A stretch of DNA of 64,000 bases from Octopus sinensis (lineage: Eukaryota): assembly GCF_006345805.1 (NCBI RefSeq), contig NC_043001.1:39432001-39496000 (forward strand). The letters are read 5' to 3'. The position numbers were made by a program, and so were the translations under genes. This document shows, one piece after another, positions 7,058 to 33,192 of the stretch. Position 1 is the first letter of the stretch. Each line of letters begins with the position of its first letter. The notes under the pieces are model-generated. The model was not told the DNA's origin, made no database searches, and saw only the letters and a list, made by a program, of their open reading frames with translations.

Positions 7058-7129
<72 letters not shown>

Positions 7130-9387: not shown

Positions 9388-9431
<44 letters not shown>

Positions 9432-11076: not shown

Positions 11077-11118
11077 CAGCAGGTTTCTTTGAAACGTTAA
11101 TGTAAGTGCCATCCATGT
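11077..11118 (-). CDS. Host-gene exon type B (42 nt, phase 1-1), peptide (D)MDGTYINVSKKPA
   Basis: aatttcttaaAG|acatggatggcacttacattaacgtttcaaagaaacctgctg|GTAAGT; open frame. Confidence 0.75.
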
Positions 11119-11357
11119 CTTTAAGAAATTAGAAAAAGAACAAATAGCATGGCTATAAATAATAATTAATTTAAGATAGTTGTGTACTGATTCTACCATA
11201 GAAATACTAATGAGATAGACTCAAACGCACTCACACATACTACATGCATATTAATAGACAAAAGTTAGTTACATATTTCATAATAGTTAGCTTTCTGTCC
11301 TTTTTAAAGATAGTTCCTAAGATCATGTTGTGTACTAATAATATCAATTGCACTTAC

Positions 11358-11417
11358 CTCGTTTTTCCATTTCTAAATATTTGGGCTCGCTAACTTCAGC
11401 ACTTTGTTCTTCCACAA
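11358..11417 (-). CDS. Host-gene exon type A (60 nt, phase 1-1), peptide (V)VEEQSAEVSEPKYLEMEKR
   Basis: aatttcttgaAG|ttgtggaagaacaaagtgctgaagttagcgagcccaaatatttagaaatggaaaaacgag|GTAAGT; open frame. Confidence 0.75.
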
Positions 11418-11541
11418 CTTCAAGAAATTAAATAAAAAAATAGGCATATTTATTGTTTGAAGAGGATGTTTTAAATATTTTGACATTGCACAGAAAGTAG
11501 TAATATATATATATACATACACATATATATATATATATATA

Positions 11542-12812
11542 TCATTATCATCATCATCACCATCATCATTATCATCATCTTTTAAGGTCTGTAGTCCATG
11601 CAAGTATGGGTTGGGCAGTTTGATCAGGGCTGGCAAGCTGGAAGGCTGCACCAGATCCCAGTCTGATTTGGCATGGTTTCTATGGCTGGATGCCCTTCCT
11701 AACACCAACCACTCCAAGAGTGTAATGGGCGTTTTTATGTGCTGCTGGCAAGGGTGCATTTTGTGTGACACCAGTATCTGCCATGACTGTAGTTTTGCTC
11801 AGATTGATGGGCCTTTTTTCAAGTATGACATAAAGTTAAAGGTCTCAGGCATTGACTTCGTGAGGCTGAACACTCTAAAGGCACTCAACTACTATGACTC
11901 CAGGAGGCTTAATGCTTGAAAGGTGCTTTTTATGTACCACCAGCATGGGTGCTAGTTATATGACACCAGCATCAGTCACAATTACAATTTCTCTTGGCTT
12001 GATGGATCCTCTCAAGCACAGCACATCACCAAAGGCCTCTGTGAGACCCAAAGTTCAAATTTCATACTTCACCACTTTGTCCCATAACTTCCTGGGTCTA
12101 CCACAGGTTCCTTCCACAGTAAGAGATTGGCACTTCTTTACACAGCTGTCCTCATCCATATGCATCACATGACCATACCACTACAGTCGTCTCTCTTGCA
12201 CACCTTATTCCCAACTTTTTTCCGAAAATGCTTACATTGTTGAACATGCACACTGACATTGCACATCCAGCGAAGCATACTGGCTTCATTTCTTTCAAGC
12301 CTATGCATGTCCTCGGCTGTCACAGCCCATGTTTTACTGCCATGTAGCATAGGTGTTTACACACCGGCATCATATAATCTGCCTTTCACTCTGTGAGAGA
12401 GGCCCTTTTTGCCAGCAGAGGTAGAAGCTCTCTGAACTTTGCCCAGCCTAGTTTTATTCTCACGGCTATGCTCTCGGAGCATCCACCTCTACTACTAATT
12501 TGGTCACTTAGATAATGGAAGCTATCTACTACCTCTAGTTTGTCCTCTGGTAGTTGATGGAGTCTGTTTGCTGTACATTTTTGATGTTTACTTGTGCATC
12601 TACAACGCATAAAAGCTATTTTCCCTGTTAACCTTCCTCTGATATTGTTGCACCTTTAGTGTCCAAAGCTTACACCAGGTGCATCTTATGGAGTTTATAC
12701 CTATGCCTTTTCTACAGATTGAGCAAGACCTCTTTCTGAAGGGATTTGTGATTTGTCTGCCTTCCTACTTACTAAGACTTTGTTTTTTGCTAGGTTAACT
12801 CTAAGGCCCTTT
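11542..12812 (-). mobile_element. RTE LINE, decayed and 5'-truncated
   Basis: MLHGSKTWAVTAEDMHRLERNEASMLRWMC and LEVVDSFHYL segments plus 3' tail. Confidence 0.88.
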
Positions 12813-12902
12813 GACCAATGTAGGCCTTCAATTTTAGACAGATATATATATATATAATATTAATTCGAGACAAAACCACTATTATTCCCTAATATTTATT
12901 AT

Positions 12903-12958
<56 letters not shown>

Positions 12959-12969
12959 TCACACACACA

Positions 12970-14139
12970 CTAGCAGAAATACCCAGCATTGCCTGGGTTA
13001 AAGAAAATAGTGGAATTTTAAAATGCCTTTTAGATCTCTAACATGAAACATAGACTATGCAGGTCTTACCTGCTAGTAGCTGAGATACCTATTTTATACA
13101 TTAATAACCTAGCATTTCTCAGGTTATTGAAAATAATGAAATTTAACTATGCCTTTTAAACCTCTAAGTAAAATGAAACATGGATTATGCAGTTCTCAAC
13201 AGTAATTAACTAAGGTGCAAACTATTAATGTCAATAACATGTTTTATCCAATGTTTTCACTACTAAAATTGTTAAAAAACCTGGTAGTTCTTTGTCTTTG
13301 CAATCACCTTCAATTGTCAGTACTTATTTAAAACACATTGAACATAAATGGATAAATTTGAGAAGAACTGATCTACTATTAATGAGTACATTTAACAAAA
13401 ATTCTACCAGATGATATAAACAAATGTATTGAAACAAATCTGAAAATCAATCACGGTTTAATTATCTAGAACTTCTAAATATACAATGTGTCCTTTAATT
13501 GGTGTTTAAATGAAAAAATTTTGGGGACTTCCAACTCCTGAACATCCTACATATAATTTCCCATGAAAGAAGCAAGGTGAATTTCAACAACCTTGAGAGA
13601 CTGTTCTTGAGACTTGTTTATTGACATAGCGAAATTTAGTTTCATTGGGAACTGGAACTGTTTAAATTCAAAGGGGAGGTCATATGGGATTAACGGGATC
13701 CATGGAATGAAGACAACCTCACCCTTATAGTCCCCAGTCATAATTGTTGCCTCTAGGACATGGAGTTGCATTGCTTTCACCACCAGTTTGGTGCCATTAC
13801 ACAGACGAGGTGGATCCAGATTCCTGAGCAGCATGATTGGGGCGCCCTTTTTAAGTGTTTAGTTGTGAGATAGCTTACCAGAATGGCTGTAGAGAATTCA
13901 GGAACTCAGTTGGAAAAACTACAGCCTGGTCATGATCATTGACAATTTCAAAAGATTTGAAAGACTGTTCTTGTCCAGGCAACAGCTGCAAGTGATCCCA
14001 GTTATGGAATAATCAAGACGGTATTATTCTTTCCAAGGTCAAATTATTCATGAACCCCAAGTATGGTGCAGATTGATCCAGAGGTTTGAGCATGCATTGA
14101 GGACATACACACACAGACAGGGTATTTTGTATATTAAGA
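12970..14139 (-). mobile_element. Non-autonomous Helitron carrying a Pif1-like helicase fragment
   Basis: Minus strand A|TC...hairpin (cccagcattgcctggg, 12982-12997)...CTAG|T. ORF 13547-13834 gives MLLRNLDPPRLCNGTKLVV...QFPMKLNFAMSINKSQ. Confidence 0.85.
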
Positions 14140-16563
14140 TTAGTCAAGGGAGAAGCCGAAAAGAAGAAGTTTGCCAATATTCAGTGACATGAGGACCAAA
14201 GAACTGAAATATTTCAGATTGCAAGACAGTGTGTGAGATAAGATCATGACGTCATGAGAGAGAAATGTTTCTGCATAGATGACGGTGCACTTGCATTTAA
14301 TGATTCTGCAAAGAAAGAGGCTTAGAAATGCCGTTTTGAAAGACAGTTGAATGTGGAGATTGAATGGAAGGAGGAGAGTTTGCTAAATGTTGACCCAATT
14401 CAGGTACCAGCTACACGAATCAACGGTACCTATGTAGATAAAGCAATTAAGGATATGAAGGCAGGGAAAGCACCCAGTTCATCAGGAATCTCCGCTAAGA
14501 TTCTTAAAATATCTGGCAGTGTGGGTTATGGTCTAGTCACTTGTATTGTAAATCAGGTGGTTCACAAAAGAGTCATACCCAATGACTAGTGTATCAGCAC
14601 CTTAGTCAACAGCTACAAAGGTAAAGGTAATGCTTTAGATAGAAATAATTACAGAGGTATCAAATTGTTGGATTAGGTGATGAAAGTTATGGAGAGAGTC
14701 ATAGCCCAACTAATTAGGGAGAGGGTTATCTAAGATGAGATGCAGTTCGGTTTTGTGCCAGGGAGAAGCACCAGTGATGCTATATTTCTGGTAAGGCAGC
14801 TGAAGGAGAAATACCTAGCCAAAGATAAATCGCTGTACTTGGCCTTTGTTGATTTGGAGAAAGCTTTTGACAGTGTCCCCCGATTCCTTATCTGGTGGTC
14901 AATGCGAAAATTAGGGATAGACAAGTAGTTGGTGGGAGCTGTACAAGCTATGTACAGGGATGCTACCAGTAAAGTGAGGGTTGGCAATGAGTACAGTAAA
15001 GATTTCAGGGTACAAGTAGGGGTTCGCCAAGGATTGGAACTCTGTATGATGAACAAGAGGCTTGTTCATCATAGTCCTCCAGGCTATTACAGATGAATTT
15101 AAGACAAGCTGCCCCTGGGAGCACCTCTACACTGATGACCTTGCTCTTATAGCTGAACCACAACCAGAACTAAAGAAGTTCCAGGTATGGAAGCAAGGTC
15201 TAGAATCGAAGGGTCTTAGAATTAATGAATCAAAAACCAAAGTCTTAGTAAGTAGGAAGGCAGACAAATCACAAATCCCTTCAGGTAGATGGCCCTGCTC
15301 GGTCTGTAGAAAAGGTGTAGGTAGAAATTCCATATGATGCACTTGGTGTAAGATTTGAACACATAAAAAGGTGAGCAATATCAGAGGAAGCTAGACTTTG
15401 TATATGGAAGATGCACAGGTACAATAAACACTGAAAATAAGCAAAAAATAGACTCCATCAACAGGTAGAGGTAGTAGATAGCTTCTGTTATCCAGGTGAT
15501 CAAGTTAGTAGTGGAGGTGGATGGGCTGAGAGGATAGCTGTGAGAATAAGATTAGGCTGGGCAAAGTTCAGAGAGCTTCTACCTCTGCTGGTAACAAAGG
15601 GCTTCTCTCTCAGAATGAACAGCAGATTGTATGATGCCTATGTGCAAATGGCTATGCTAGATGGCAGTGAAACATGGGCTGTGACAGCCAAGGACGTGTG
15701 TAGGCTCGAAAGAAATGAAGCCAGTATGCTTCATTGGATGTGCAATATCAGTGTGCATGTTCAACAGAGTGTATGCATCTTGAGAGAAAAGTTAGGCATA
15801 AAAGATATCAGATGTGGTGTGCAAGAGAGATGACTGCACTGGTATGGTTATGTGATACATATGGATGAGAACAGCTGTGTAAAAATGTGCCAATCTCTTA
15901 CTGTGGAAGGAACCTGTGGTAGATGTAGATCCAGGAAGACATGGGACAAAGTGGTGAAGCATGAAATTTGAACTTTTGACATCACAGAAGCAATGACTAG
16001 TGACTGAGACCTTTGGTGATATGTTGTGCTTAAGAAGACTTGTGAAGCTTAATGAAATCCTTGTCATGGCTGATGTTGGTGTCACAAAACTGGCACCCAT
16101 GCTGGTGGCACATAAAGGGCACCACTCAAGCATTGGGCCTCCAGAGGCAAAGTGGCTGAGTTCCTTTCAAGTGTTGGGTCCCATGGAGGCATAAGTAGCT
16201 GAGTTTCTTTGAGCATTGGGCCTCACAGAGGCAAAGTGGCCAAGTTTTTTTTTTAATGTTGGGTCTCATGGAAGCAAAGTGGCTGAGCTCCTTTGAAGCA
16301 GTGGGTCTCATGGAAGCAATGACTGAGATCTTTGGCAATTATGTTGTGCTTGAGAAGAAGACCAGTATCATGCAAATGGCATCCATACTGGTGGCACGTT
16401 AAAGCACCCATTACACTCTCGGAGTGGTTGGTGTTAGGAAGGGCATCAAACCATAGAAAATCATGCCAAATCAGACTGGAGTCTGGTGCAACCTTCCAGT
16501 GTGCCAGCCCAGTCCAACCCATGTCAGCATGGACAACGGACATTAAATGATGATGATGATGAT
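14140..16563 (+). mobile_element. RTE LINE, decayed and 5'-truncated
   Basis: MQFGFVPGRSTSDAIF, LAFVDLEKAFD and YTDD segments, 3' UTR and (GAT)n tail. Confidence 0.92.
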
Positions 16564-16599
16564 ATATACACACATATATATACATATATATATATATAT

Positions 16600-16675
<76 letters not shown>

Positions 16676-17261
16676 GAAATATGTATTTAGAAACAAAAAT
16701 ATTTAAATCCAGCCAAATTCCATCCTCTCATTCAGATATTGTGAAAAAGAAAAGCATTGCTAAATAAATAATTTATTTGGTATGAACAAGAAGAAACAAA
16801 GAGTAATTTTGGTTAATATGCCATTTCAAAGTGAGAGTTTGGAAAAGGGCTCCTCAGTGGATTGGCACAAAAATTCTATTCTATAAGCAAAATGCTAATA
16901 ATTATGTAAAAGTAGTGTTTATTGAGGAGTTGAGTGAACAAAATATATTTCATCGGGATATGACCTCAGAATGTGCAAACACTAAATTTAATTTTGTCAT
17001 TATTTAATACAATACTGTACTATTTCTGTCACTTTAATATTTTATTGATATTCAAAAGTGGTGATGTTAAGAGAAGTTATTCACAAATATGTTTACAGAA
17101 ATTCATTTCTGTATTTGTTTGGCAAGATTACTTATGTAAAATTGTGTGTTGAAACAGATATTGTTCTGTTTGAGGATGTTCACTTTTTTTTTTTTTTGTG
17201 GGGAATGGGGGTGGCACAATTAACTACATGTACTATATAGTTGCTCTTCACTTCAGTTTTA

Positions 17262-17630
17262 TTATTACCTCCGCCTTGGCAAAGGCGGGGGTTTTGTTTT
17301 CAGTCGTGTTTGTTTGTTTATTTGTCCATGGGCAAGATATCTCAAGAACCGCTGGATGGATTCAGATGAAATTTTCAGTGATGTTTGGCCTCATGACTGG
17401 CATGAACTAATTAAGTTTTGGGATTGATCTGGACAAGAATTCTGGATTATTTTTCCTGTTTTTTTTTTACTTAATTTTTGAGAGTGGTTGGGTTCATTTT
17501 TATATTCTCATTTGTAAGCGCTTTCAAGTTTATTTCAGATATTCTCATTTTAAAAGTCATCTCAGGCTAATCATTGAGAGGACATTGATGTTGCTTTGGT
17601 GGAGGTTTGTGCTCTCTGCGAGCTCTTGTT
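17262..17630 (+). mobile_element. DINE-1/HINE-like non-autonomous Helentron-type element
   Basis: Starts ttattacctccgcc..ggcggggg, then a (GTTT)n tract, and ends ggtggaggt...ctcttgtt; architecture typical of DINE-1-like elements. Confidence 0.55.
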
Positions 17631-18139: not shown

Positions 18140-18181
18140 CTCCAGTTTTCTTTGAAATGTTAACATAATCACCATCCATGT
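18140..18181 (-). CDS. Host-gene exon type B (42 nt, phase 1-1), peptide (N)MDGDYVNISKKTG
   Basis: aatttcttaaAG|acatggatggtgattatgttaacatttcaaagaaaactggag|GTAAGT; open frame. Confidence 0.75.
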
Positions 18182-18425: not shown

Positions 18426-18485
18426 TTCGTTGCTTCATTTCTAAACATTTGGGCTCACTAATTTCAGCATATTGCTTTTCCACAG
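18426..18485 (-). CDS. Host-gene exon type A (60 nt, phase 1-1), peptide (A)VEKQYAEISEPKCLEMKQR
   Basis: ttttttgaAG|ctgtggaaaagcaatatgctgaaattagtgagcccaaatgtttagaaatgaagcaacgaa|GTAAGT; open frame. Confidence 0.75.
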
Positions 18486-18570
18486 CTTCAAAAAATGAAA
18501 TTAAATATTTGGTATATTTATTGTTTGGAGAGGATGTTTTTAATGTTTTGATGTTGCATGGAATGTAGTA

Positions 18571-18601
<31 letters not shown>

Positions 18602-19182: not shown

Positions 19183-19217
<35 letters not shown>

Positions 19218-20138: not shown

Positions 20139-20157
20139 TATATACATATACAAATAC

Positions 20158-22672
20158 ATCATCATCATCATCGATTAACATCCATTTTCCATGCTGGCAT
20201 GAGTTGGACAGTTTGACTGAGGTCTGGAGAGCCAGCGGCTGCACCAGGCTCCAATCTTATCTGGCAGTGTTTCTACAGCTGGATGCCCTTCCTAATGCCA
20301 ACCCTCCGAGAGTGTAGTGGATGCTTTTTACATGTCACTGGCACAGGAGCCAGTAAGGCAGACCTGGCAATGATCACATTCAGATGGTGCTTTTTACATA
20401 CCACTGGCAAAGGAGCCAGTCAGTGGGTACTGGCATCGGTCACAATCGGTTGGGGATTTTTCCATGCTACTGGCATGGGAGCCAGTCAGGTGGGCCTGGT
20501 ATCAACCACATTTGGATGGTGCTTTTTACGTGTCACTGGCACAGGAGCCAGTCTGAGGGTACTAGCATCGGCCGTGTTTGGTTGGTGCTTTTTATGTGCC
20601 ACCGGCATGGGAGCCAGTCAGGCAGATCTGGCATCAACCACATTTGGATGGTGCTTTTTACATGTCACTGGCATGGGAGCCAGTCTGAGGGTACTGACAT
20701 TGGCCACGTTCAGTTGGTCCTTTTTACATGCCACCAGCATGGGAGCCAGTCAGGGGGCACTGGCTCCAGCTACAATATTGGTTTTACTTGACTCAACAGG
20801 TCTTCTCAAGCATATCATATCACCCAACACATCAGCAGTATTCTTAACAGGACCGGACATGCATGGCAGCGATCTCACTTTAGCTGCTGGGTCTTCTCAA
20901 TCACACCATATCTCTAAAGGTCCTGGTCTCCTGTCATTGCCTTTGTTTGGTTCAATGTTTGAAGGTCATGCTTCACCACCTTATCCCATGTCTTCCTGGT
21001 TCTACTTTTTCCCTAGGTTCCTTGTACTGTTAGGGAGTGGCACTTCTTCACACAGCAGTCTTCATTCATACATAACACATAGCAATACCAGCACAGTCAC
21101 CTCTCTTGCACACCACATTTGATGCTTCTTACACCCAACTTTTCTCTCAGGGTGCTTACACTCTCAGAGCGACCACCCCCACTACAGACTTGGTCACCTA
21201 GGTAGCAGAAGCTATTAACCACTTCTAGTTTCTTCTCCTGGCATGTGATGGAATCTGTTTTCTGTACATCTTCAGCGTTCATTTCCTTAGTGCATCTTCC
21301 ATACAAAAACTATCTTCCAAGTTAAACTTCCTTTGATATTACTGCATCTTTTATTTGTCCACAGCTTACACCAGGTAACATCATATGAAGTTTCTACCCG
21401 TGCCTTTTCTACAGATTGTGCAGGCCATCTACCTGAAGGGGATTGTGATTTGACAGCCTTCCTACTTACTAAGACTTTGGTTTTGGCTATGTTAACACAA
21501 AGGCCCTTCGATTCTAGACCTTGCTTTCACACCCTAAACTTCATCTCCATTTCTGGCAGTGATTCAGCTATTAGAGCAAGGTCATCAGCATAAAGGAGCT
21601 CCCAGGGGTAACCTGTCTAGAATTCCTCAGGTATTGCCTGGAGGACTATAATGATCCTTGGTAAACCCCTACTTCTACTTGGAATTCTTCCCTATACTCA
21701 TTGCCAACCCTCACCTTACTGACAGTATCCTTGTACAGGACTTGTACAGCTCTTACCAGCCACTTGTCTATCCCCAGTTTCCGCATTGACCACCAGATAA
21801 GGGATTGGGGAAACCTGTCAAAGGCTTTCTCCAAGTCAATAAAAGCCAAGTACAGAGGTTTATCTTTGGCTAGATATTTCTCCTGCACTTGCCTTACCAG
21901 AAATATAGCATCAGTGGTGCTTCTGCCTGGGACAAAACTGAACTGCATCTAGACTAACTCTCTCCCTAATTAGTTGGGCTATGACCCTCTCTGGAACTTT
22001 CATCACATTATCCAATAATTTGATACCCTTGTAGTTACTTCTGTCTAAAGCATCACCTTGTAACAATTGACTATGGTGCTGCTACACTAGTCATTGGGTA
22101 TGACTCCTTCATGAACTATCTGATTTACAATGCAGGTGACAAGACCATAACCCACATCACCCAATATTTTAAGTATCCCAGCAGTTATTCCTGATGGGCC
22201 AGGTGCTTTCTCTGTCTTCATATCTTTATTGGCTCTATGTACCTGGATACTGTTGATTTGGATAGCTGGTCACTCAACTGGGTCAACCTTTGGCAGACTC
22301 TCCTCCTCCCATTCATTCTCCACATTCAGCAATCTTTCATAATGGCTTCTCCAACACATTTTCTTTGCAGAATCATTAAATGCAAGTGCACCATCATCCA
22401 TGCGGACACATTTCTCTCCTGTGACTTCACAGTTTTCTCTCACACACTGTCTTGCAATCCAAAATACTTCAGTTCTCTGATCCTCATGTCACTGAACATT
22501 GGCAAATGTCTTCTTTTTTGCTACTCCCTTGGCTATATATACCTGTCCCTTAGCTTCCCTTTTAGCTATCTGATATATTCTCCTGCCATCCCCACTCTCC
22601 CAGGCATTCCAAGCCTGTTTCTTTGCTCTAATGGCCCTGTCTACAGCATTGTTCCACCACCTTTTACCCTTA
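20158..22672 (-). mobile_element. RTE LINE (5'-truncated) with expanded 66-bp 3' UTR tandem repeat
   Basis: MQFSFVPGRSTTDAIF, FIDLEKAFD and YADD segments; about 7 repeats at 20320-20790. Confidence 0.92.
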
Positions 22673-22673
22673 C

Positions 22674-22719
<46 letters not shown>

Positions 22720-23055
22720 ATAAGTATATATTCTTTGTTTTTGTACCCATTGACAAGGTTGCAAAAGCAACAAACATTTTTGGAAGAGACAATAGAAAAT
22801 TGTAAGTGAATTGAAATTGAACAAAGAATAAATAGCATGGCTAGAAATAATACCTAAATTATGTTAGTATTGCGCTGACACAGACATAGTAAATACTACT
22901 GAGACAGGCTCAAACATTCTCACACACACACATACATGCATGTACACATACATTAACAGACAAAAGTTCGAGGGTGACATATTTCATGATTGTTACCTTT
23001 CTGTTTTTGTTCTTCTAAGATCATGCTATGTACTATCAATATTGATTATACTTAC

Positions 23056-23115
23056 CTGGGAGTCTCATACATAAATATTTGGGATCACTAATTTCAGCAT
23101 ATTGATCTTCCACAG
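23056..23115 (-). CDS. Host-gene exon type A (60 nt, phase 1-1), peptide (T)VEDQYAEISDPKYLCMRLP
   Basis: ttttttgaAG|ctgtggaagatcaatatgctgaaattagtgatcccaaatatttatgtatgagactcccag|GTAAGT; open frame; paralog of 18426-18485 and 11358-11417. Confidence 0.75.
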
Positions 23116-24379
23116 CTTCAAAAAATTATATAAAAATGGGCATATTTATTGTTTGGAGAGGATGATATATGGATATTGCACAGAAAGTAACTAAAAATAT
23201 TGGAAAACATATTGTACATTTCATATATATATATATATATATACAACCAAGCTGAATGTATAGTATAAGTTCTTCATCCTCTAACTGATGTATTGGAAAA
23301 AAGAAAAGAATTGCTTAATAAATTCATTTTGTATGAACAAAAGGAAACAAAGAGTAATTTTGGTAAAATGGCATTTCGAAATTTGTGCTTGGAGAGAAAG
23401 TTCTTCAGTAAATTGGCCTTCAAAATTTTATTCCATAATCAAAATGCCAATTTTATTAGAGAAATGATATGTAAGTTACTACATATAGGGTGGTTCACAG
23501 AATAAAATTTACTTCTGTGGCTTTTGAACTCAGAATATTGATTCTACTATTTCTGCCACGTTACCATTAAAAGTCATTCCTAAATATGGCTGGAGAAATA
23601 AGATATTTTTCATAATCCCTTTCAAGCTAGAGATATTCAAAAACAGGACTCATTATGGTTAATTATCAACAAAACATATATTATATAGAATGCATATATA
23701 CTTAGTAATTAAGTGGAGCATGCAGAAAAATATGTGTATAAAGTATGTGGATGATGTGGATGTATATATACATACATTTTATGCAATTATATGTACTTAT
23801 GTGGGTGAACTTAAAATATTTAGGTACATGTATGAATGCATAATCAAGTATGTAAGGAGATGTTTAGTGTGGAAAATGCCTGTTGTGCAAATTTACATTG
23901 CATGGGGTATTTAGAAAGGTTGTATTAAGTTGATATAAAATGGTTTCAATTTGGCATTAATTTTTAAAAAAACGAACTGGTATTTGAAAATTATAGATTA
24001 AAAATTGACTATTAAAAATAATAAAATAAATCTTAAAGAGTTAAATATTATTAAGGGAATAAGAATATGGGTTATATCACTAATAAGAAAAGGTATTAAG
24101 AGTGGGTTATAATATGGTAATTGATATTTTTAGAGTATATAGGTAATACTTATAGTGCAATTGAAACACTAAAAGGCAGGAATTATATAAAAATGGCAGG
24201 GTTTATATAAAAAGTATGTGATTAAGGTGATTAAGGTATGTATTATATATTATTATTTGCCAGAACAGAAGTGGGGAATTATTTATATTTAGAAATAATA
24301 TATTCGTGTGCATATAAACATTGGAAAATTTTCTCTGATCTACCATTTAAATGTTTATGCTACAAAAATAAAATATTGT

Positions 24380-27090: not shown

Positions 27091-28238
27091 TACTCTTTAC
27101 TTTCCTCTTTCCTCTTGCTTCCCTTTCGTTCTCCACCTTTTTCTTTTTCCTTTTTCTTTTTTCTTTTCTTCTTTCTTCTTTTTCACACATGTATTTATAT
27201 TGTGTATTCTTTTATTATTTTTTATGTTGATTTTTATATTTCTTATTTTTTATTTTCTATCTGCAATTTTATTTTTTATTTGTATACTTGTAAGAAAAAT
27301 AAAAGCCTTTTTCTATACAAGCAACCTTCTAAACCACAGAATTTCAGTTTGAAAATGGATATCGAAGAGCTAGAAACTCATTAGAGTAACTGTAAACATT
27401 ATCATTAAAATAAAAACTATCCCCGCAAAAGCCATCTCAACTCATTTTATCAAATTTCTGTAGATTAAAATAGTTTTAATCTACAGTAATTTGCCGGCAG
27501 ATAAGTCATGTTTTTTAATTTTAAATTTATTCTAAACAATATCGACATATGTCTTTTATTAACTTTATACACTAACATGTATTTACATTTATTTACATTC
27601 TCCAAAATGAATTACTCATGTTCCCAATAATACTCAATTGGAATTTTTAATAATACTAATATCATTATATACATAGAGATTACATATAGTTTTTGTTTCT
27701 TTATATATATATATTTTTTATTCCTTATTATTTTCTTATTATTTTATTATCTTATTATTTTTTATTCATTATCATATCATGAGGTAAGTTAAAGTTTTAG
27801 TTTTAGGTTTTTTTAGGAATTTGACCTGAGGAGTGACTGATTTTGGGAGTAATATCATTTTTCCGTTCTAATGAACTTGGATAAGGTTTCTTATATGATT
27901 TTCTATAGTCCTAAGTCAGCATGAAACGTGCGTAGTCAATATATTAATACTTACTTTTATGCATTATATTTTGGATTAATTTTTTGTTTAATTTATACTT
28001 TATTGATTTTAGATTAATATTTTTATGATGAATGTTTTCTATGTATGATATTCGATTTTCTATAGTATATGACTCACAGCATGGTTTTGGATGGGTCCTT
28101 TACTGACTGAGTTGTGAAATGGTGGCTCATCTCTAAATTAGTTATATACATATATTATATATTATTTATTACGAATTTTGGTATAATATTATTATACTGA
28201 ATTTTACCTGTAAGGTTGGAATAATAATTTATTCCCTA

Positions 28239-28294
<56 letters not shown>

Positions 28295-28309
28295 TATTAG
28301 TCGCCATGA

Positions 28310-28485
28310 TAGATCGTTAGCCACTACACACATTTTTTTCTCTCCTTGTTTTTTCTGTGTCCCTTTCTGTAGAAGAGCGTAAGCTCAAAACATAAAAGAC
28401 TTTTTCTATTCCTGAGCATTATACTAATACATCTGTTTGTTTTGTACACCACCTGTCTTCGACTTTTGTTTTTTTCCTAAACTCT

Positions 28486-28490
<5 letters not shown>
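28310..28490 (+). mobile_element. ~180-bp TA-flanked interspersed element with degenerate hammerhead-like motif
   Basis: cttt-ctgtaga-a-gagc-gtaa-gctc-aaaacat-a-aaag followed by tcctgagc; same layout as 26380-26580. Confidence 0.45.
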
Positions 28491-28538
<48 letters not shown>

Positions 28539-28545
28539 ATGGGTA

Positions 28546-28692
28546 CAGCCATGGCTGTGTAGTTAGAGTTTGCTTAACAAATCAAGTTCTGGATTCAGTT
28601 TTACTACTTGGCAGCTTGAGCAAATGTCTTCTACTATAGCTCCAGGCTGGCCAAATCCTTGTTGAGGTATTGGTAGGTGGAAATAGAAAGAA
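28546..28692 (+). mobile_element. tRNA-derived SINE (decayed)
   Basis: catggctgtgtagttag ... ggattcag ... cttgagcaaatgtcttctactatagc ... ggtaggtggaaatagaaag. Confidence 0.65.
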
Positions 28693-28697
28693 ACCTA

Positions 28698-29232
28698 GGA
28701 TCTTTTCGGTTTGAATGGCAGTTTTTAACATAATTTTTTTTAGAAGTATATGTTTCAAACATAGGAGATCATGATTCCATACAAAAATTAAGGCTAGCGT
28801 TGGGGATTGGGTTTAGGATTTAATATTAGGGTTAGTATTGTAGTTTATATTTTAGGGATAAAATTAGGATTAGGATCTTAAGTTTTAAGGTAAGAGCTGA
28901 GGTTTAGAATTTAGCGTTAGGGTTTCGTGTTAGCATTTAGGATTACAATTTTGAGTTAGGGTAAGGGTTAGTTTAAACTGAAATAGAAAAGGGATTAAAA
29001 AAATTTTAATTTGTGTACAAATTTTTATAGAATTGAACTTGCGTATGTTTGGAATATAGAAATCAAACTATAGCCTTAAAAAAATAAAAATTAAAAGGTC
29101 TACAAAGTGTTCTTAGTCCGAAATTTCCTTGAGTGATTTTTTTCTTTGAAAATATTTACAAAAAGTTAGATAAAGAGCTTTGCAATGTTACTGTTAATTT
29201 TCTGAGTCAGGCAATGTTGGGTATTTCAGCTA
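28698..29232 (+). mobile_element. Chimeric DNA-element remnant with degenerate TTAGGG repeats
   Basis: The left end equals the TIR of 35402-35829; degenerate ttaggg array at ~28800-28970; the right end caggcaatgttgggtatttcagcta resembles the Helitron 3' end at 12970. Confidence 0.45.
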
Positions 29233-29304
29233 ATGTGTGTATATATAATTTTGAAAATGATATGAAATATAATGCTATTTATTAATTGTATTTATTATAC
29301 TTAC

Positions 29305-29346
29305 TGCTTGGTTCAGACAAAATAGTAGCATAACCGCCATCCACAT
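29305..29346 (-). CDS. Host-gene micro-exon (42 nt, phase 1-1), peptide (N)VDGGYATILSEPS
   Basis: Minus strand reads tttcattttcttttatgaAG|atgtggatggcggttatgctactattttgtctgaaccaagca|GTAAGT. Flanks resemble those of the 33151 exon. Confidence 0.72.
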
Positions 29347-29793
29347 CTTCATAAAAGAAAATGAAAAATGAATATATTTATTGCTTGTGTGTGTGGTGCA
29401 TAATATCTAAAACAAACTATTTCTAGGATAAAAATAGATTCTACAATCATATTTCCAAATTATATTTGGAAAATATGCTAATTTTTTGTTCATGTAACGT
29501 TTTTGTTTCACCATCATTAGTTAATGTTCACTTTCCATGCCAAACATGAGATGGATGGTTTGGTTGGATCTGGCAAGCTCCGAATTCAGCTCTTGCATAG
29601 TTTCTGCAGTTGGATGACATTCCCAACACCAGCTACTTTTCAGAGTATACTGTATATCTTTTTTTTTTTAATCATGTCACTGACACTATTGAGTTAGCTG
29701 GTTAACTTGCAAGACAGAAAAAGAACATGGAAAAAATGAAAAAGTAAAATCTCTCGCTACTAAGTAGAGAGTATTTGAGGTGTAGCTTGATTT

Positions 29794-29980
29794 CATCACC
29801 ATCATCATCATCATCATTGTTTAACGTCCACTTTCCATGCTAGCATGGGTTGGATTATTTTGACTGAGGACTGGCGAACCAGATGGCTGCACCAGGCTCC
29901 AATCTTGATCTGGCAGAGTTTCTACAGCTGGATGCCCTTCCTAACGCCAACTACTCCGAGAGTGTAGTGGGTGCTTCAGG
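29794..29980 (-). mobile_element. RTE LINE 3' tail
   Basis: catcatcat..gtttaacgtccactttccatgctagcatgggttgg... Confidence 0.85.
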
Positions 29981-30739
29981 TATTAAAAGGCTAAAATATA
30001 ATAGAGAAACAAGCACTGGTGTCTTTCTATAGAGGAAATATATGGCTACCCCATTTTAGAGGTGGGTTGGAGTAGCAGAGGTTAGGGTGATCTACCTATG
30101 TGCCAAGATCATTAAAATCGGTTGGACGGTGTGGGAGGAGTTAGAGTAACCCCAAACACACACACACACACAGACACCATTACACATTTATGTATATGTA
30201 TGTGTGTATGTATGTATGTATGTATGTATGTATGTACGTATGTATGTATGTATGTATGTATGTATGCATGTAAGTCTGTGTATGCATGTATGTATATGTG
30301 TGTATATGTATACATGTATGTGTGTACGTTTGAATGTATTCTACATATTCATATGTTTGGGTGGGTGTGTTTTGGCGTTTGTGTTTTGTCTCTGTGTGTG
30401 TGTGTACCTCTGTCTCCTTGTGTGTGCATGTCTGAGTGTGTATGTGTGTGTGTATGTGTGTGTCCATATGTGTGAACGTGTGTCTCCATATGTGTCCTTG
30501 TGTGAAGTGAAGTGTGTGTGTGTGTGTGTATAAGGTCGTGCATTTCAGTCTTCATTTGCGTATGTGTGTGTATGTGTGCTTGTCTGTTCATATTACCTAT
30601 GTACCTATCCGTCAGTATGTCTATCTGTTTACTTTCATATCCATTTACCTACATACATGTGCATACACACACACACATACATACATCTACATAACAGCCC
30701 ACTAACTACCTGTATATAAATATAAACTGTAGGTATAGG

Positions 30740-31075
30740 GGTATGATTATCTACTACGTATATTTCCTATTTAGTACAGGGGATGTTTCATTTATGAGAA
30801 CGTACTCTGTATTTGTCTGAGTGTTGGGTCCTTCAGGTGCTTGGATAAAATGCAGCTGTCAAGTTGATCCAGGTTGCCTCTATGTTGGTCCTTGACATGT
30901 TGGTGGAGTATGGAGGACTATTTTTTGTCATCATATTGTCTCAAATGTTCATTTAGTCTTTATACAATGCTCCTAGATGTCTTCCCTATACATGTCATGT
31001 TCATGTCTTTATAAGCACCTTCTACGCATCTTATTCCGTAGACTACATTTCTAGTTTGCCACTACTTTCCTTAGG
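30740..31075 (-). mobile_element. Penelope-like GIY-YIG endonuclease remnant
   Basis: Minus: TRNVVYGIRC..MTCIGKTSRSIV*RLNEHLRQY...SSILHQHV. Confidence 0.65.
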
Positions 31076-31489
31076 TAAATCAACACTCACTGCACTGTTG
31101 CAAATATAATAACATCATGATTTTATTCACAGCATTACTGTTTCATATGCATATGGTCTGCTACAACAAAGTTAGAATGCATAAAAATGTGTCCATTCAT
31201 TACGAATTACGATTTCTACCCTTATATAGTATTTTTTTGAAACTTTTAGGGCAACGCAAAAAAAAAATCCTGCCCCCCCCCCCCGGTTCAGTTAATACAA
31301 AAGAATAAAGTCCCACAGTTATTTTAAAATCAGTCTCTTTTGTTATTTCCATGAATGAACATGTAACATATATTGTATAATGGTATATACATGATTCTTT
31401 TGTAGAACCAAGGTGAGGCCTTAGACCAATGTAAAATTATGCATGCCAGGAAAATCTTTTATTTCAATAAAAGTTGAGCAGAGGTCAAG

Positions 31490-31990
31490 CAAACTGACTC
31501 AGAAGGTTCATTCGATATGGTGGTGAGAGCCTCTGACAGTGATAACATATGTGAGCTTATTGATTCTAGACACACAAGAAAATCCCCTTTGGTCTATAGA
31601 GGGCTGATGCTTTGGTGTTATGAAAAGGGGCAAATGGACACAACTTCAATAGGTTCAGGAAAGACTTTTCCCTGCTCTTAATTCCCTTGAGCTCAAAATT
31701 ACTATAGAGACAAATTTGAAAATAATTAATTTCCTAGGTGTGACATTACACCTGGACAAATTCTCTTGAACTCTTCCAGAAAGCAACTACAAAACTGACT
31801 TATATTAACACAACTTCCTGCCACCCAGCCATAGTTAACAAAAACCATATGAAGGGTGTTTGCAGAAGGATCTTCATCACAATTTCCTGTAAGATCTTTG
31901 ACAAGGCAGTCCTATATTATAACGAAGCCTTGATTACTAACAGTTTCAAGGATAGCATCAGAATAGCCTGACTCATGTCTTCATTAGATT
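31490..31990 (+). mobile_element. Penelope-like RT remnant
   Basis: FDMVVRASDSDNICEL, GLYRADAL and NFLGVTLHLD segments, heavily decayed. Confidence 0.6.
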
Positions 31991-32571
31991 AATGAAAATT
32001 TTCCACAGATGCATAAGCACAGAAAAATTTTCAACACACACACGTTGAGGGTTTCTTTAAGTTGTACACAAACAAAAAGCAAATTTTAGTAAAGCAATCC
32101 AAACCAAACACAGGAGCAGGTTGCTCATGTGGAGATAATGCCACATTCCCTCTCCCCTACACTCTATATCACAACATTGCTCCCCACTTCACACTTCCAT
32201 ACACAATTGAAGCTAGCCTATGGGGCAATGCCTAAAAAGATCAGTCCAAGGAATATAATTCTAATGTGGCTGAAGGCTAAATTTGCTTTTTGACTGTGTG
32301 ATTTCCATCATGCTTTGATTTTTTTTTCCCAACATCTCTATAACACTTTGACAGATATTGTTATTTAAATATTCAGTTGGAAAGATCACAAGCTATACTT
32401 TTCCATGTCTAATGTGTAATGAGTATAAAATTATTCGTTTTAATGTAGAAATTTTGTTGTGAAATTATTGAGTAACACAAACTGGCTATTATAAGACAAA
32501 ATTAGTAACACGGAATACAAAATATACAATTATGCTCTTCTTTTCTGACTTATAGAAACTCCTTGGAAAGT

Positions 32572-32611
<40 letters not shown>

Positions 32612-32811
32612 TAGATAGATAGATAGATAGATAGAGAGATAGAGGAAGATATATTCAGACATGCATATACATATATATATACACACACATATATACATGC
32701 ACATGCATACACACATATATACATGCATGCAAGTATACATTCATTCATACATACACACATACATACATGCATACATACATACATACATACATACATACAT
32801 ACATACATACA

Positions 32812-32842
<31 letters not shown>

Positions 32843-32870
32843 GTATAAAATAATATCAAATATAAAACTA

Positions 32871-33065
32871 AGGAGGCAGGCTGCCAGAAGCTTTAGCATG
32901 CCAGGCAAAATGTTTAGCAGCATTTTGTCTGTCTTCATGTTCTGAGTTCAAATTCTGCTCAGGTCAACTTGGCCTTTCACTCCTCCAGGGTTTTAAAAAA
33001 AGTACAGGTTGAGTAATGGAGTCGATGAAATTGAATTTCCTCTCCCCTGAAATTACTAACCTTCT
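32871..33065 (+). mobile_element. tRNA-derived SINE (second family)
   Basis: ggcaggctgccagaagctttagcatgccaggc...gttctgagttcaaattc...gcctttca; reverse copy at 39945-40152. Confidence 0.65.
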
Positions 33066-33150
33066 ACCAATGTTCATGGTAGAAGGTTAGTAATTTTAAA
33101 ACCAATATCAAATATAAAGCTATTTATTATTTGGTGTTAATTATACTTAC

Positions 33151-33192
33151 TGTCAAGTGTTTCTGAAATACTTGCATAATAATCTTCAGTGC
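33151..33192 (-). CDS. Host-gene micro-exon (42 nt, phase 1-1), peptide (S)TEDYYASISETLD
   Basis: Minus strand reads ttttccatttcttttcttaaAG|gcactgaagattattatgcaagtatttcagaaacacttgaca|GTAAGT. Pyrimidine tract, length divisible by 3, no stop, and paralogous to the other tyrosine-motif exons. Confidence 0.72.

What the first reader, a model, noticed from the sequence alone, without database searches (positions are those of the whole stretch)
11077..33192. Hidden minus-strand gene built from duplicated micro-exons, each carrying a tyrosine signalling motif
Seen: seven 42- or 60-nt segments, each bounded by a pyrimidine tract ending in AAG and a GTAAGT donor, and each symmetric phase 1. In genomic order they splice into 348 nt with no stop: STEDYYASISETLD-NVDGGYATILSEPS-TVEDQYAEISDPKYLCMRLP-AVEKQYAEISEPKCLEMKQR-NMDGDYVNISKKTG-VVEEQSAEVSEPKYLEMEKR-DMDGTYINVSKKPA. 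Six of seven have Tyr at module position 6 after acidic or Gly residues, with Ile/Val at +3. Established: YxN is the Grb2 SH2 consensus, YxxM is the PI3K p85 SH2 consensus, and acidic-YxxI/V is typical of Src-family substrates and SH2 docking. These are not strict ITIMs because the -2 residue is D/G/K. Inference: this is the disordered cytoplasmic tail of a receptor or adaptor, possibly immune or phagocytic, whose SH2-docking code is expanded one exon per motif. Symmetric exons would allow any combination of skipping without frameshift. The ORF track misses it entirely.
Basis: partly seen in the sequence, partly recalled or inferred. Interest (0 to 1): 0.85.

Follow-up and report, generated by a model that had tools for sequence, protein, structure and literature searches.

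The report
Octopus receptor tail built from micro-exons
The seven tiny exons are real: they encode most of the intracellular tail of an uncharacterised octopus immunoglobulin-type surface receptor, one tyrosine docking motif per exon, and the sister-species gene is annotated with isoforms that skip them in different combinations.

Summary
Observation confirmed. All seven 42/60-nt segments sit on the minus strand with AAG acceptors, GTAAGT donors and phase 1-1, and splice into one open 348-nt frame. A strict scan finds 6 such segments on the minus strand and none on the plus strand.

The window is Octopus DNA, 97-99% identical to O. vulgaris chromosome OX597818.1. The exons are not a separate hidden gene. 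They are the 3' half of an IgSF type I receptor gene, orthologous to O. bimaculoides LOC106874069. Its Ig and transmembrane exons lie just beyond window position 64000.

O. vulgaris annotates only a 123-aa fragment using six of the seven exons. The eight RefSeq isoforms of the ortholog differ only by whole 14- or 20-aa tail modules and by two alternative terminal exons.

Across the family, the 14-aa module conserves YxN (Grb2-type). Orthologous dN/dS is 0.42.

SH2 binding, phosphorylation, tissue and ligand are untested. This is a new, unstudied member of a known kind of receptor.

The parts
58560..58578 (-).
   Evidence: Orthologous to the exon encoding VKHNKK in all 8 RefSeq isoforms of O. 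bimaculoides LOC106874069. Splice sites are ttttttcag|..|gtaagt, and 18/19 nt are identical to O. bimaculoides.
41429..41505 (-). E0, 77-nt exon (K)DAVGTNPLEDVHMVSIHGINASLAG.
   Evidence: Homologous to the N-terminus of O. bimaculoides XP_014777805.1 and to the exon at L004:57909-57985 used by RefSeq. 69/77 nt are identical, the donor is gtaaga, and it is in frame with its neighbours.
33151..33192 (-). E1, 42-nt cassette exon (G)TEDYYASISETLD
   Evidence: AAG|..|GTAAGT, phase 1-1. Included in O. vulgaris model P0001. It has no ortholog in O. bimaculoides; its closest relative is the E2-type exon.
29305..29346 (-). E2, 42-nt cassette exon NVDGGYATILSEPS
   Evidence: The ortholog at L004:67293-67334 is skipped in RefSeq isoforms X4 and X8.
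23056..23115 (-). E3, 60-nt cassette exon TVEDQYAEISDPKYLCMRLP (YAEI and YLCM)
   Evidence: Skipped in O. vulgaris model P0001. The ortholog at L004:78444-78503 is present in all 8 isoforms.
18426..18485 (-). E4, 60-nt cassette exon AVEKQYAEISEPKCLEMKQR (the YxxM tyrosine is Cys here)
   Evidence: The ortholog at L004:80635-80694 keeps YLEM and is skipped in isoforms X5, X7 and X8.
18140..18181 (-). E5, 42-nt cassette exon NMDGDYVNISKKTG (YxN)
   Evidence: The ortholog at L004:80899-80940 is skipped in isoforms X3 and X6.
11358..11417 (-). E6, 60-nt cassette exon VVEEQSAEVSEPKYLEMEKR (YLEM)
   Evidence: Included in P0001. Its O. bimaculoides ortholog is a dead pseudo-exon: acceptor AG lost, 5-nt deletion, donor GT lost.
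11077..11118 (-). E7, 42-nt cassette exon DMDGTYINVSKKPA (YxN)
   Evidence: The ortholog is at L004:86422-86463.
9744..9787 (-). Alternative terminal exon, coding part (G)KIRQNLWDDLIYV-stop
   Evidence: 85% identical to the O. bimaculoides exon encoding GKISQNFWDDLIYV*, which five of the eight RefSeq isoforms use. The ORF and stop are conserved and it is in frame after E7.
4276..4301 (-). Terminal coding exon of the O. vulgaris fragment model P0001 (DSHCEKKH-stop); support unknown
   Evidence: Mapped by tblastn. The acceptor has a weak pyrimidine tract. It is in frame after E7.
7246..7300 (-). Decayed eighth copy of the 60-nt exon (pseudo-exon)
   Evidence: Homologous to E3/E4/E6 including flanks, but with an in-frame TAA, a 1-nt insertion and a truncated 3' part.
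22813..22851 (-). Orphan acceptor-side flank of a lost 42-nt exon downstream of E3
   Evidence: It aligns to the conserved block upstream of E5 and E7 (tatttatagccatgctatttgtt...). Homology ends where the exon should begin.

Best explanation
Window 4-59 kb (minus strand) is the 3' half of one large gene (at least 89 kb) for a type I immunoglobulin-superfamily receptor. It belongs to a clustered family seen so far only in Octopus and is orthologous to O. bimaculoides LOC106874069.

Shown:
- The Ig-domain exons and the transmembrane exon lie just upstream of the window.
- The window carries the whole cytoplasmic tail as a string of micro-exons: 19 nt, 77 nt, then seven 42/60-nt phase 1-1 cassettes, then alternative terminal exons.
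- The cassettes arose by tandem duplication of a [60-nt exon, short intron, 42-nt exon] unit.
- They turn over by birth and death: decayed copies occur here, E6 is dead in O. bimaculoides, and the O. vulgaris reference has one extra exon absent from this window.
- Cassette exons are annotated as skipped in several combinations in the ortholog and in a paralog.

Inferred mechanism:
- The tail is an unstructured scaffold of short tyrosine motifs.
- After ligand-driven clustering, Src-type kinases phosphorylate the tyrosines, which lie after acidic or Gly residues.
- The 14-aa modules (x[MVL]DxxYxN[VI]SKKPx) then bind the SH2 domain of Grb2/Drk.
- The 20-aa modules (..SEPKY[LV]xM..) bind the SH2 domains of PI3K p85.
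- YAEI sites bind Src-family SH2 domains.
- Exon copy number and splicing set how many docking sites of each type a given isoform carries.
For: Exon anatomy and non-chance occurrence.

Locus identity:
- The window is 97-99% identical to O. vulgaris OX597818.1.
- P0001 joins six of the seven exons at exactly these junctions.
- The annotation that produced P0001 integrates Iso-Seq, RNA-seq and ab initio evidence (PMC10700109).

Receptor context:
- Homologues have Ig ectodomains, a TM helix and tails of the same modules.
- Four intact Ig exons and a TM exon lie upstream on the same strand in the O. vulgaris locus.
- TM + VK + E0 + E1-E7 + any of three terminal exons is one open frame.

Orthology with LOC106874069:
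- Exon order matches, with about 90% nucleotide identity in exons and flanks.

Splicing:
- Eight RefSeq isoforms of the ortholog and seven of paralog LOC106869178 differ only by whole 14/20-aa modules and terminal exons.
- In paralog LOC115212119 (O. sinensis) every tail module is its own 42- or 60-nt phase 1-1 exon with an AAG acceptor and a GTAAGT, GTGAGT or GTGAGC donor.

Constraint:
- dN/dS is 0.42 (p=0.04) between orthologous tail exons.
- There are 0/423 exon differences against 24/2413 flank differences between the window and the O. vulgaris reference.
- Across 23 14-aa modules, Tyr6 is kept in 22 and Asn8 in 20. Across 15 20-aa modules, Tyr14 is kept in 14 and Met17 in 15.
- Unconstrained copies decay.

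Disorder: AlphaFold2 gives no confident fold for P0001 (mean pLDDT 38). This is weak support because it was a single-sequence run.

Motif meanings (pYxN for the Grb2 SH2 domain, pYxxM for p85 SH2 domains, pYEEI/YAEI for Src SH2 domains) come from established knowledge and were not tested here.
Against: - No read-level transcript evidence for this locus could be examined.
- The only annotated product here is a 123-aa fragment with a doubtful first exon. The Ig and TM exons of this locus are in no annotated protein.
- No transcript-derived protein matching the window tail was found in the large protein collections, although that word-indexed search is not exhaustive.
- Exons are no better conserved than adjacent introns, between orthologs (0.904 vs 0.911) or between paralogous units.
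- Conservation shows no third-codon-position pattern across modules. Constraint is therefore modest and partly at the RNA or splicing level.
- Two motifs are already lost in this gene: E4 has Y14 changed to C and E6 has Y6 changed to S.
- Every motif also fits the generic endocytic signal YxxPhi.
- Phosphorylation, SH2 binding, ligand and tissue are all untested.
Confidence: 0.75

Rival explanations
1. The tyrosine motifs are mainly sorting signals. YxxPhi motifs would bind the AP-2 mu2 subunit and drive endocytosis or recycling of the receptor, rather than serving as phosphotyrosine docking sites.
For: All eight Y-x-x-hydrophobic sites in the tail (YASI, YATI, YAEI x2, YLCM, YLEM, YVNI, YINV) fit YxxPhi. 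Splicing-controlled tyrosine sorting motifs are known in IgSF adhesion molecules; the L1CAM RSLE mini-exon is an example (own knowledge).
Against: Family-wide conservation is more specific than YxxPhi. Asn at +2 is kept in 20/23 14-aa modules and Met at +3 in 15/15 20-aa modules. Those residues define Grb2 and p85 SH2 selectivity. One sorting signal normally suffices, so an array of 8-10 is hard to explain. The two roles are not mutually exclusive.
Confidence: 0.1
2. The tail exons form a separate short gene (a TM-less or short-anchored adaptor) with its own promoter. This is how O. vulgaris P0001 and the O. bimaculoides models XP_052824007.1 and XP_014777805.1 are drawn. On this reading they are not joined to the upstream Ig and TM exons.
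For: P0001 (123 aa) starts at its own ATG exon. P0005 and P0008 are short tail-only models.
Against: - The P0001 first exon lies between Ig exons of the same strand and has no homologue in the family.
- The TM exon ends in phase 1 and reads straight into VK, E0 and E1.
- All eight RefSeq isoforms of the ortholog join Ig, TM and tail.
- P0008 simply begins at an internal Met of E0.
Confidence: 0.08
3. In this species the locus is a decaying, untranscribed duplicate, and P0001 is an annotation artefact. The exons merely look intact because the duplication is young.
For: - Exon identity does not exceed intron identity.
- E4 and E6 have each lost a tyrosine.
- Relic copies and a lost exon lie in the array.
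- One exon is deleted relative to the reference.
- The ectodomain exons are unannotated.
Against: - All ten window exons (VK, E0, E1-E7, alternative terminal exon) keep open frames and consensus splice sites.
- Dead copies lose these features quickly.
- The four Ig exons and the TM exon are intact.
- dN/dS is 0.42.
- There are no exon differences against about 1% in flanks versus the reference.
- The ortholog is a multi-isoform RefSeq gene.
Confidence: 0.06
4. The segments are parts of a transposable element or satellite consensus.
For: The window is full of interspersed repeats, including LINE debris. The exons do recur together with their flanks.
Against: - Copies occur only in one orientation and inside this gene family's tails.
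- They lie at orthologous positions in O. bimaculoides.
- They are spliced into RefSeq proteins.
- None overlaps the LINE-like repeat families found by self-comparison.
Confidence: 0.01

Closest known systems
O. bimaculoides LOC106874069 (XP_052824255-263, 'uncharacterized protein', 8 isoforms) and its Octopus paralogs (LOC106869178, LOC115212116, LOC115212119, LOC115212249)
   Same: Orthologous or paralogous genes. They share the Ig ectodomain, TM segment, VKHNKK and NPLED exons, the 14-aa YxN and 20-aa YxxM modules, one exon per module, and the alternative ends ...LIYV* and DYQ*.
   Different: Exon content differs. E1 and an intact E6 are present here but not in O. bimaculoides. The O. vulgaris reference has one more 42-nt exon than this window. 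None of these genes has a described function, and no paper mentions them.
PECAM-1/CD31 (vertebrate IgSF receptor)
   Same: It has an Ig ectodomain, one TM helix and a cytoplasmic domain encoded by a series of short exons (exons 9-16). These are alternatively spliced, and a 19-aa cassette exon (exon 14) carries a functional tyrosine (PMC2132561).
   Different: No sequence homology was detected. PECAM-1 tyrosines are ITIMs that recruit SHP-2, and its tail exons are unique rather than tandem duplicates of two module types.
LAT and other transmembrane adaptors; CD28/DAP10 (YMNM/YINM)
   Same: These work like the proposed tail. LAT has several pYxN sites that recruit Grb2-family adaptors on an unstructured tail. 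CD28 and DAP10 combine YxN and YxxM specificity for Grb2 and PI3K p85 (own knowledge).
   Different: LAT has no ectodomain, and CD28 and DAP10 have a single motif. In none of them is each motif a separate duplicated cassette exon. No homology.
Nephrin / SYG-2 / Sns family
   Same: These are multi-Ig adhesion receptors whose tyrosine-phosphorylated tails recruit SH2 adaptors (Nck, p85; own knowledge). One family relative in O. vulgaris was auto-named 'synaptogenesis syg-2-like'. A CD80-like C2-set Ig domain hit is present.
   Different: No fibronectin III domain was detected, the motifs differ (YDxV in nephrin), and there is only weak Ig-level similarity. No PDB relative was found by sequence.

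Membership tests
Immunoglobulin-superfamily type I membrane receptor | Ig-like domains in the extracellular part | tested here: met
   The ortholog P0024 has Ig_3, I-set, Ig_2, C2-set_2 and ig hits above the Pfam cut-offs. Four intact Ig-type exons with the conserved Cys/Trp pattern lie at L001:523-13862, just outside the window.
Immunoglobulin-superfamily type I membrane receptor | Single hydrophobic transmembrane segment between ectodomain and tail, followed by basic residues | tested here: met
   The TM exon at L001:14812-14913 encodes IIIGCTVGIVLLIILGLLIYKCHKKR. It is in frame with the window exons. It lies about 830 bp beyond window position 64000.
Immunoglobulin-superfamily type I membrane receptor | N-terminal signal peptide | tested here: inconclusive
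   The ortholog has a hydrophobic N-terminal stretch, FNLLYLKYLFIIQFFCVSL. No signal-peptide predictor was available, and the 5' exons of this locus were not retrievable.
Octopus LOC106874069-type receptor family | Tail made of 14-aa x[MVL]DxxYxN[VI]S[KR]KPx and 20-aa xVE[ED]QxAExS[ED]PKY[LV]xMxxx modules, one 42/60-nt phase 1-1 exon each | tested here: met
Octopus LOC106874069-type receptor family | Orthology: same exon order and about 90% nucleotide identity in exons and flanking introns | tested here: met
   Exons are 309/342 identical and flanks 2377/2610 identical. VK, E0, E2, E3, E4, E5, E7 and the alternative terminal exon are all collinear.
ITIM-bearing inhibitory receptors | [S/I/V/L]-x-Y-x-x-[I/V/L] | tested here: not met
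The -2 residues are D, G, D, K, G and G for the six Yxx[IV] sites, so none fits.
ITAM-bearing activating receptors | YxxL/I - x6-8 (extended definition 6-12) - YxxL/I | tested here: inconclusive
   E1+E2 give YASI-x10-YATI. That fits only the extended spacing. E1 has no ortholog in O. bimaculoides, so the pair is not conserved.
Grb2/Drk SH2 docking sites | Tyr with Asn at +2 (pYxN) | tested here: met
   E5 has YVNI and E7 has YINV. Across 23 family modules, Tyr is kept in 22 and Asn in 20. This is a sequence pattern only.
Grb2/Drk SH2 docking sites | Phosphorylation-dependent binding of the SH2 domain | not testable with these tools
   Needs biochemistry.
Class IA PI3K (p85) SH2 docking sites | Tyr with Met at +3 (pYxxM) | tested here: met
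   E3 has YLCM and E6 has YLEM; E4 has CLEM, so its Tyr is lost. Across 15 family modules, Tyr is kept in 14 and Met in 15. This is a sequence pattern only; binding was not testable.
Nephrin/SYG-2 family | Eight Ig domains plus a membrane-proximal fibronectin III domain | tested here: not met
   No fn3 hit in the ortholog or a paralog. No significant sequence match to any solved structure.
Transposable element or satellite repeat | Dispersed copies in both orientations unrelated to gene structure | tested here: not met
   Copies occur only in one orientation within family tails and at orthologous positions.

The most novel reading that the evidence does not exclude
The tail is a signalling scaffold whose valency can be programmed. 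Genomic exon copy number varies between species and apparently between haplotypes, and combinatorial cassette splicing varies within an animal. Together these would set the number and ratio of Grb2-, PI3K- and Src-type docking sites. They would also set whether two 14-aa modules lie adjacent, which gives ITAM-like YxxI-x10-YxxI spacing. The same ectodomain could then deliver graded or qualitatively different signals. The family would be an octopus-lineage invention for immune or neuronal cell recognition, organised as a rapidly evolving gene cluster.
Probability: 0.3. Interest if true: 0.75.

Novelty: new member of a known kind. Interest (0 to 1): 0.55.

Why it matters
Cephalopods lack antibody-based adaptive immunity, have very large nervous systems, and are known for lineage-specific expansions of cell-surface genes. 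This locus is a clustered, fast-evolving IgSF receptor family found so far only in Octopus. Databases list every member as "uncharacterized" and no paper was found that mentions them.

Its tail is an unusually clean case of a signalling code written one motif per exon. It grew by tandem exon duplication, is pruned by exon death, and is re-dealt by cassette splicing. That makes a general question directly testable: how does the number and mix of SH2 docking sites tune receptor output? Natural isoforms serve as the allelic series.

There is also a practical annotation point. The O. vulgaris reference models this gene as a 123-aa orphan fragment and leaves its Ig and TM exons unannotated.

Tried and rejected
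1. A candidate terminal exon at window 8767 (aag|GGTATCAATGA, giving G-Y-Q-stop, which matches the family C-terminus) was rejected. Alignment shows it corresponds to intron sequence upstream of the true terminal exon. About 0.2 such hits are expected by chance (own estimate from base frequencies). The orthologous DYQ-type terminal exon lies outside the window at L001 ~89.0 kb. There it reads DY-stop, with TAG where O. bimaculoides has CAG.

2. A search for a 'VKRNKETSSAK'-type juxtamembrane exon, as seen in paralogs, found nothing. A first pattern scan for VKxNKK also failed. The exon was only found by aligning the O. bimaculoides exon.

3. I looked for a third-codon-position pattern in conservation across 21 paralogous exons. 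There is none: identity is 0.69/0.72/0.72 and 0.68/0.71/0.67 by codon position. That test gives no support for coding constraint.

4. Exons are not better conserved than introns.

5. Genomic DNA for P0002, P0003 and P0021 could not be fetched because their gene ranges exceed 100 kb. P0015 and P0020 were not on record.

6. A PDB sequence search gave no hit. Pfam finds nothing in the tail.

7. Three literature searches, including by LOC identifiers, found no description of the family.

8. No exact annotated ortholog of this locus's ectodomain was found in any octopus proteome.

9. The AlphaFold2 single-sequence run is uninformative beyond showing no confident fold.

10. P0010, a bacterial-type repeat protein in the HMMER list, was dismissed as a spurious low-complexity match.

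Full report

Yes. The seven peptides map to the minus strand. The exact exons are:
- E1 33151-33192 (42 nt)
- E2 29305-29346 (42 nt)
- E3 23056-23115 (60 nt)
- E4 18426-18485 (60 nt)
- E5 18140-18181 (42 nt)
- E6 11358-11417 (60 nt)
- E7 11077-11118 (42 nt)

Each is preceded by a T-rich tract ending in AAG and followed by GTAAGT. Each begins with two bases that complete a split codon and ends with one base of the next codon. This is phase 1-1, so removing any of them keeps the frame. Joined, they give 348 nt that are open in one frame only.

A strict scan for this anatomy finds 0 cases on the plus strand and 6 on the minus strand, all of them claimed exons. E3 has 13 rather than 14 pyrimidines and just misses. 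A looser scan gives 12 hits per strand, and all seven claimed exons are among the minus-strand hits.

The exons are paralogous together with their flanks. A unit of [60-nt exon, ~245-nt intron, 42-nt exon] is repeated at 18 kb and 11 kb with 80.8% identity over 543 nt. A third copy at 23 kb keeps the 60-nt exon and the acceptor flank of the 42-nt exon but has lost that exon. A fourth copy at 7246-7300 is a wreck, with an in-frame TAA, a 1-nt insertion and a truncation.

**2. Where the window comes from and what is annotated there**

The spliced peptide hits one protein in the 5.8-billion-sequence collection. This is P0001, a 123-aa 'Hypothetical predicted protein' of Octopus vulgaris.

Its gene spans 70 kb of chromosome OX597818.1. 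The window aligns to that locus (L001) at 97-99% identity in reverse orientation. The window is therefore from O. vulgaris or its sibling O. sinensis.

The O. vulgaris annotation combined Iso-Seq, RNA-seq, protein alignments and ab initio predictions through EVidenceModeler and PASA (PMC10700109). P0001 may be transcript-supported, but I could not see the reads. So the gene is not completely hidden, although it is annotated only as an orphan fragment.

**3. What the gene really is**

A HMMER search of 1.84 billion representative proteins with P0001 found relatives only in O. sinensis, O. vulgaris and O. bimaculoides. One further hit, a bacterial-type repeat protein, was dismissed as spurious.

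The long relatives (for example XP_036359227.1 at 1220 aa, CAI9722592.1, XP_036359229.1) share one architecture. They have a hydrophobic N-terminus and several Ig-like domains. These are followed by one TM helix and a basic stop-transfer stretch. The tail is made of the same two modules, a 14-mer like DMDGTYVNVSKKPA and a 20-mer like VVEEQCAEVSEPKYLEMGQR, repeated from a few times to more than 20 times. Pfam confirms Ig_3, I-set, Ig_2 and C2-set_2 domains. No fibronectin III domain and no solved-structure relative were found.

In the O. vulgaris locus, four intact Ig exons lie on the same strand upstream of the window's end, at L001:523-864, 9239-9490, 11303-11560 and 13554-13862. A TM exon follows at L001:14812-14913 and encodes ...IIIGCTVGIVLLIILGLLIYKCHKKR, leaving in phase 1. 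The TM exon is about 830 bp beyond window position 64000. None of these exons belongs to any annotated protein. The 'first exon' of P0001 sits between two Ig exons and has no family counterpart, so I regard it as spurious.

**4. The ortholog and the missing exons**

The cluster listing showed that O. bimaculoides LOC106874069 has eight RefSeq isoforms. Their tail reads KCHKKR-GVKHNKK-DTVGTNPLEDAHMVSIYGINASLTG-DVEDVYATISSEPS-TVEDQDAEISDPRYLCMRHL-TVEEQYAEISEPKYLEMKQQ-NMDGAYVNISKKPG-DVEGTYINVSKKPG, followed by GKISQNFWDDLIYV* or DYQ*. This is clearly the window's gene.

Its locus (L004) is collinear with the window. Guided by it, I found three further coding exons in the window:
- A 19-nt exon at 58560-58578, encoding GVKHNKK.
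- E0, a 77-nt exon at 41429-41505, encoding DAVGTNPLEDVHMVSIHGINASLAG.
- An alternative terminal exon at 9744-9787, encoding GKIRQNLWDDLIYV-stop.

The other terminal exon (DYQ* in O. bimaculoides) is at L001 ~89.0 kb, about 4.8 kb past window position 1. There it reads DY-stop.

TM + 19-nt exon + E0 + E1-E7 + any of the three terminal exons is one uninterrupted frame. It gives a tail of about 170 aa with 10 tyrosines.

**5. Splicing**

The eight isoforms of the ortholog differ only as follows:
- The E2-like 14-mer is absent from X4 and X8.
- The E4-like 20-mer is absent from X5, X7 and X8.
- The E5-like 14-mer is absent from X3 and X6.
- They use one of two alternative terminal exons.

The seven isoforms of paralog LOC106869178 differ only by 14-, 20- and 54-aa (20+14+20) blocks of the tail. 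In paralog LOC115212119 of O. sinensis, every tail module is its own 42- or 60-nt phase 1-1 exon, with an AAG acceptor and a GTAAGT, GTGAGT or GTGAGC donor.

NCBI's pipeline creates isoforms from transcript or RNA-seq alignments (own knowledge of the pipeline, not checked here). Read-level evidence for this particular locus is still missing.

**6. Evolutionary behaviour**

- Window versus O. vulgaris reference: 0 differences in 423 exon bases against 24 in 2413 flanking bases.
- Window versus O. bimaculoides: exons 90.4% identical and flanks 91.1%. Exons are therefore not slower than introns overall.
- Substitutions are nevertheless biased towards synonymous changes: dN/dS 0.42, Fisher p=0.04, 21 of 114 residues changed.
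- Across 21 paralogous exons from three loci, exon bases (0.69-0.71 identity) and splice-proximal intron bases (0.72-0.92) are better kept than distal intron (0.45-0.55). There is no codon-position pattern.

I read this as a fast-evolving linear-motif tail with strong selection on splice signals and a few residues.

The array turns over:
- E6 is intact here but dead in O. bimaculoides (AG lost, 5-nt deletion, GT lost).
- E1 has no O. bimaculoides ortholog and is a duplicate of the E2 type.
- The O. vulgaris reference has an additional intact 42-nt exon (DMDDTYVNFSKKPD, L001:59947-59988). It lies in a ~976-bp segment that this window lacks.

**7. The motifs**

Aligning 23 14-aa and 15 20-aa modules from ten tails gives the following:
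- 14-mer: x-[MVL]-D-x-x-Y-x-N-[VI]-S-[KR]-K-P-x, with Tyr 22/23, Asn 20/23, Asp 22/23 and Pro 22/23.
- 20-mer: x-V-E-[ED]-Q-x-A-E-x-S-[ED]-P-K-Y-[LV]-x-M-x-x-x.

Tyr14 (14/15) and Met17 (15/15) are nearly invariant. The conserved cores are therefore YxN and YxxM.

By established knowledge, pYxN is the Grb2 SH2 consensus and pY[MVIE]xM is the PI3K p85 SH2 consensus. YAEI is the Src-SH2 site of FAK Tyr397 (own knowledge).

This window's tail carries the following sites:
- Two YxN sites (E5, E7).
- Two YxxM sites (E3, E6; E4 has lost its Tyr).
- Two YAEI sites (E3, E4).
- YASI (E1) and YATI (E2), which are spaced as YxxI-x10-YxxI.
- A C-terminal LIYV.

None is an ITIM. AlphaFold2 finds no fold in P0001 (mean pLDDT 38). 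This is consistent with disorder but weak, because it was a single-sequence run.

**8. Mechanism, with status**

Shown:
- Gene structure and membrane topology by homology.
- One module per exon.
- Annotated cassette skipping.
- Motif conservation.
- Exon birth and death.

Inferred:
- Clustering of the Ig ectodomain leads to Src-type phosphorylation of the tail.
- pYxN then recruits Grb2/Drk, leading to Ras or Gab signalling.
- pYxxM recruits PI3K, and pYAEI recruits or retains Src-family kinases.
- Exon number and splicing set the valency and mix of sites.

Main rival for the motifs: generic YxxPhi endocytic signals, which every site also fits. The specific conservation of Asn+2 and Met+3 argues against that being the whole story.

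**9. Comparison with known systems**

It works like PECAM-1 in gene logic. [quoted passage not shown] It works like LAT, CD28 or DAP10 in proposed biochemistry. It is homologous to none of them.

It fails the ITIM pattern and the nephrin architecture, and it meets only the extended ITAM spacing. It is a member of an Octopus-restricted IgSF family, as far as these databases show, whose members are all labelled 'uncharacterized'. I found no paper on it.

**10. Verdict**

Novelty: a new, unstudied member of a known kind (an IgSF receptor with a spliced tyrosine-motif tail), with an unusually regular, tandemly amplified exon-per-motif design. Interest is moderate (0.55). The sequences are already in RefSeq, but the architecture and its implications appear undescribed and are readily testable.

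Noticed in passing
window 23676; L001:59455-60430: A ~976-bp segment present in the O. vulgaris reference is absent from the window. It carries an extra intact 42-nt cassette exon (DMDDTYVNFSKKPD, AAG|..|GTAAGC). This is an exon copy-number difference between haplotypes or sibling species.
   Followed up: partly
window 7246-7300 and 22813-22851: There is a decayed eighth 60-nt exon copy with a stop, a frameshift and a truncation. Separately, an orphan acceptor flank remains where a 42-nt exon has been lost downstream of E3.
   Followed up: yes
L004:~86130-86190 (O. bimaculoides): The ortholog of E6 is a dead pseudo-exon in O. bimaculoides (acceptor AG changed to TG, 5-nt deletion, donor GT changed to GA). 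It is intact and included in the O. vulgaris model here, so exon loss is lineage-specific.
   Followed up: yes
window ~23141-23165, ~18511-18535, ~11443-11467 (25-45 nt upstream of each 60-nt exon): An intron block, CATCCTCT(C/T)CAAACAATAAATAT, is conserved upstream of all 60-nt exons in three species and in paralogs. It may be a branch-point or splicing-control element. It is mistranslated ('LNHTLQTINMPFILF') into O. vulgaris models CAJ1099246.1 and CAJ1099336.1, which are annotation artefacts.
   Followed up: partly
window 41504-41507: E0 has a tandem acceptor AG|AG. The 77-nt form is needed after the 19-nt exon (phase 1, then 2, then 1). The 75-nt form would restore the frame if the 19-nt exon were skipped.
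   Followed up: no
window 29305-33192 (E1+E2 spliced): Adjacent 14-aa modules place tyrosines as YASI-x10-YATI, which is an extended-ITAM-like spacing. Skipping a 60-nt exon would create the same spacing between other 14-aa modules. The E1/E2 pair is not conserved in O. bimaculoides.
   Followed up: partly
window 9744-9787: The alternative C-terminus ...DDLIYV-stop fits the class II PDZ-ligand pattern (hydrophobic-x-hydrophobic at the C-terminus; own knowledge). It is conserved as ...DDLIYV in O. bimaculoides.
   Followed up: no
L001:523-14913 (outside the window, beyond position 64000): Four intact Ig exons and the TM exon of this gene are in no annotated O. vulgaris protein. The reference annotation models the gene only as a 123-aa fragment with a doubtful first exon at L001:10001-10059.
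   Followed up: yes
L001:~89004 (outside the window, beyond position 1): The conserved DYQ-stop terminal exon reads DY-stop in O. vulgaris, with TAG where O. bimaculoides has CAG.
   Followed up: partly
window 54010-55464 (+); repeats at 48728-50879, 55302-57404, 14141-16039, 21152-22661: The introns are packed with LINE-type retroelement debris. One 484-aa ORF has an endonuclease/exonuclease/phosphatase (endonuclease-RT) domain. A ~2-kb repeat family occurs at least six times in both orientations.
   Followed up: partly
window 7050-7130 and 22690-22730: Long (TA)n and (GT)n microsatellites lie inside the decayed or partial duplication units.
   Followed up: no
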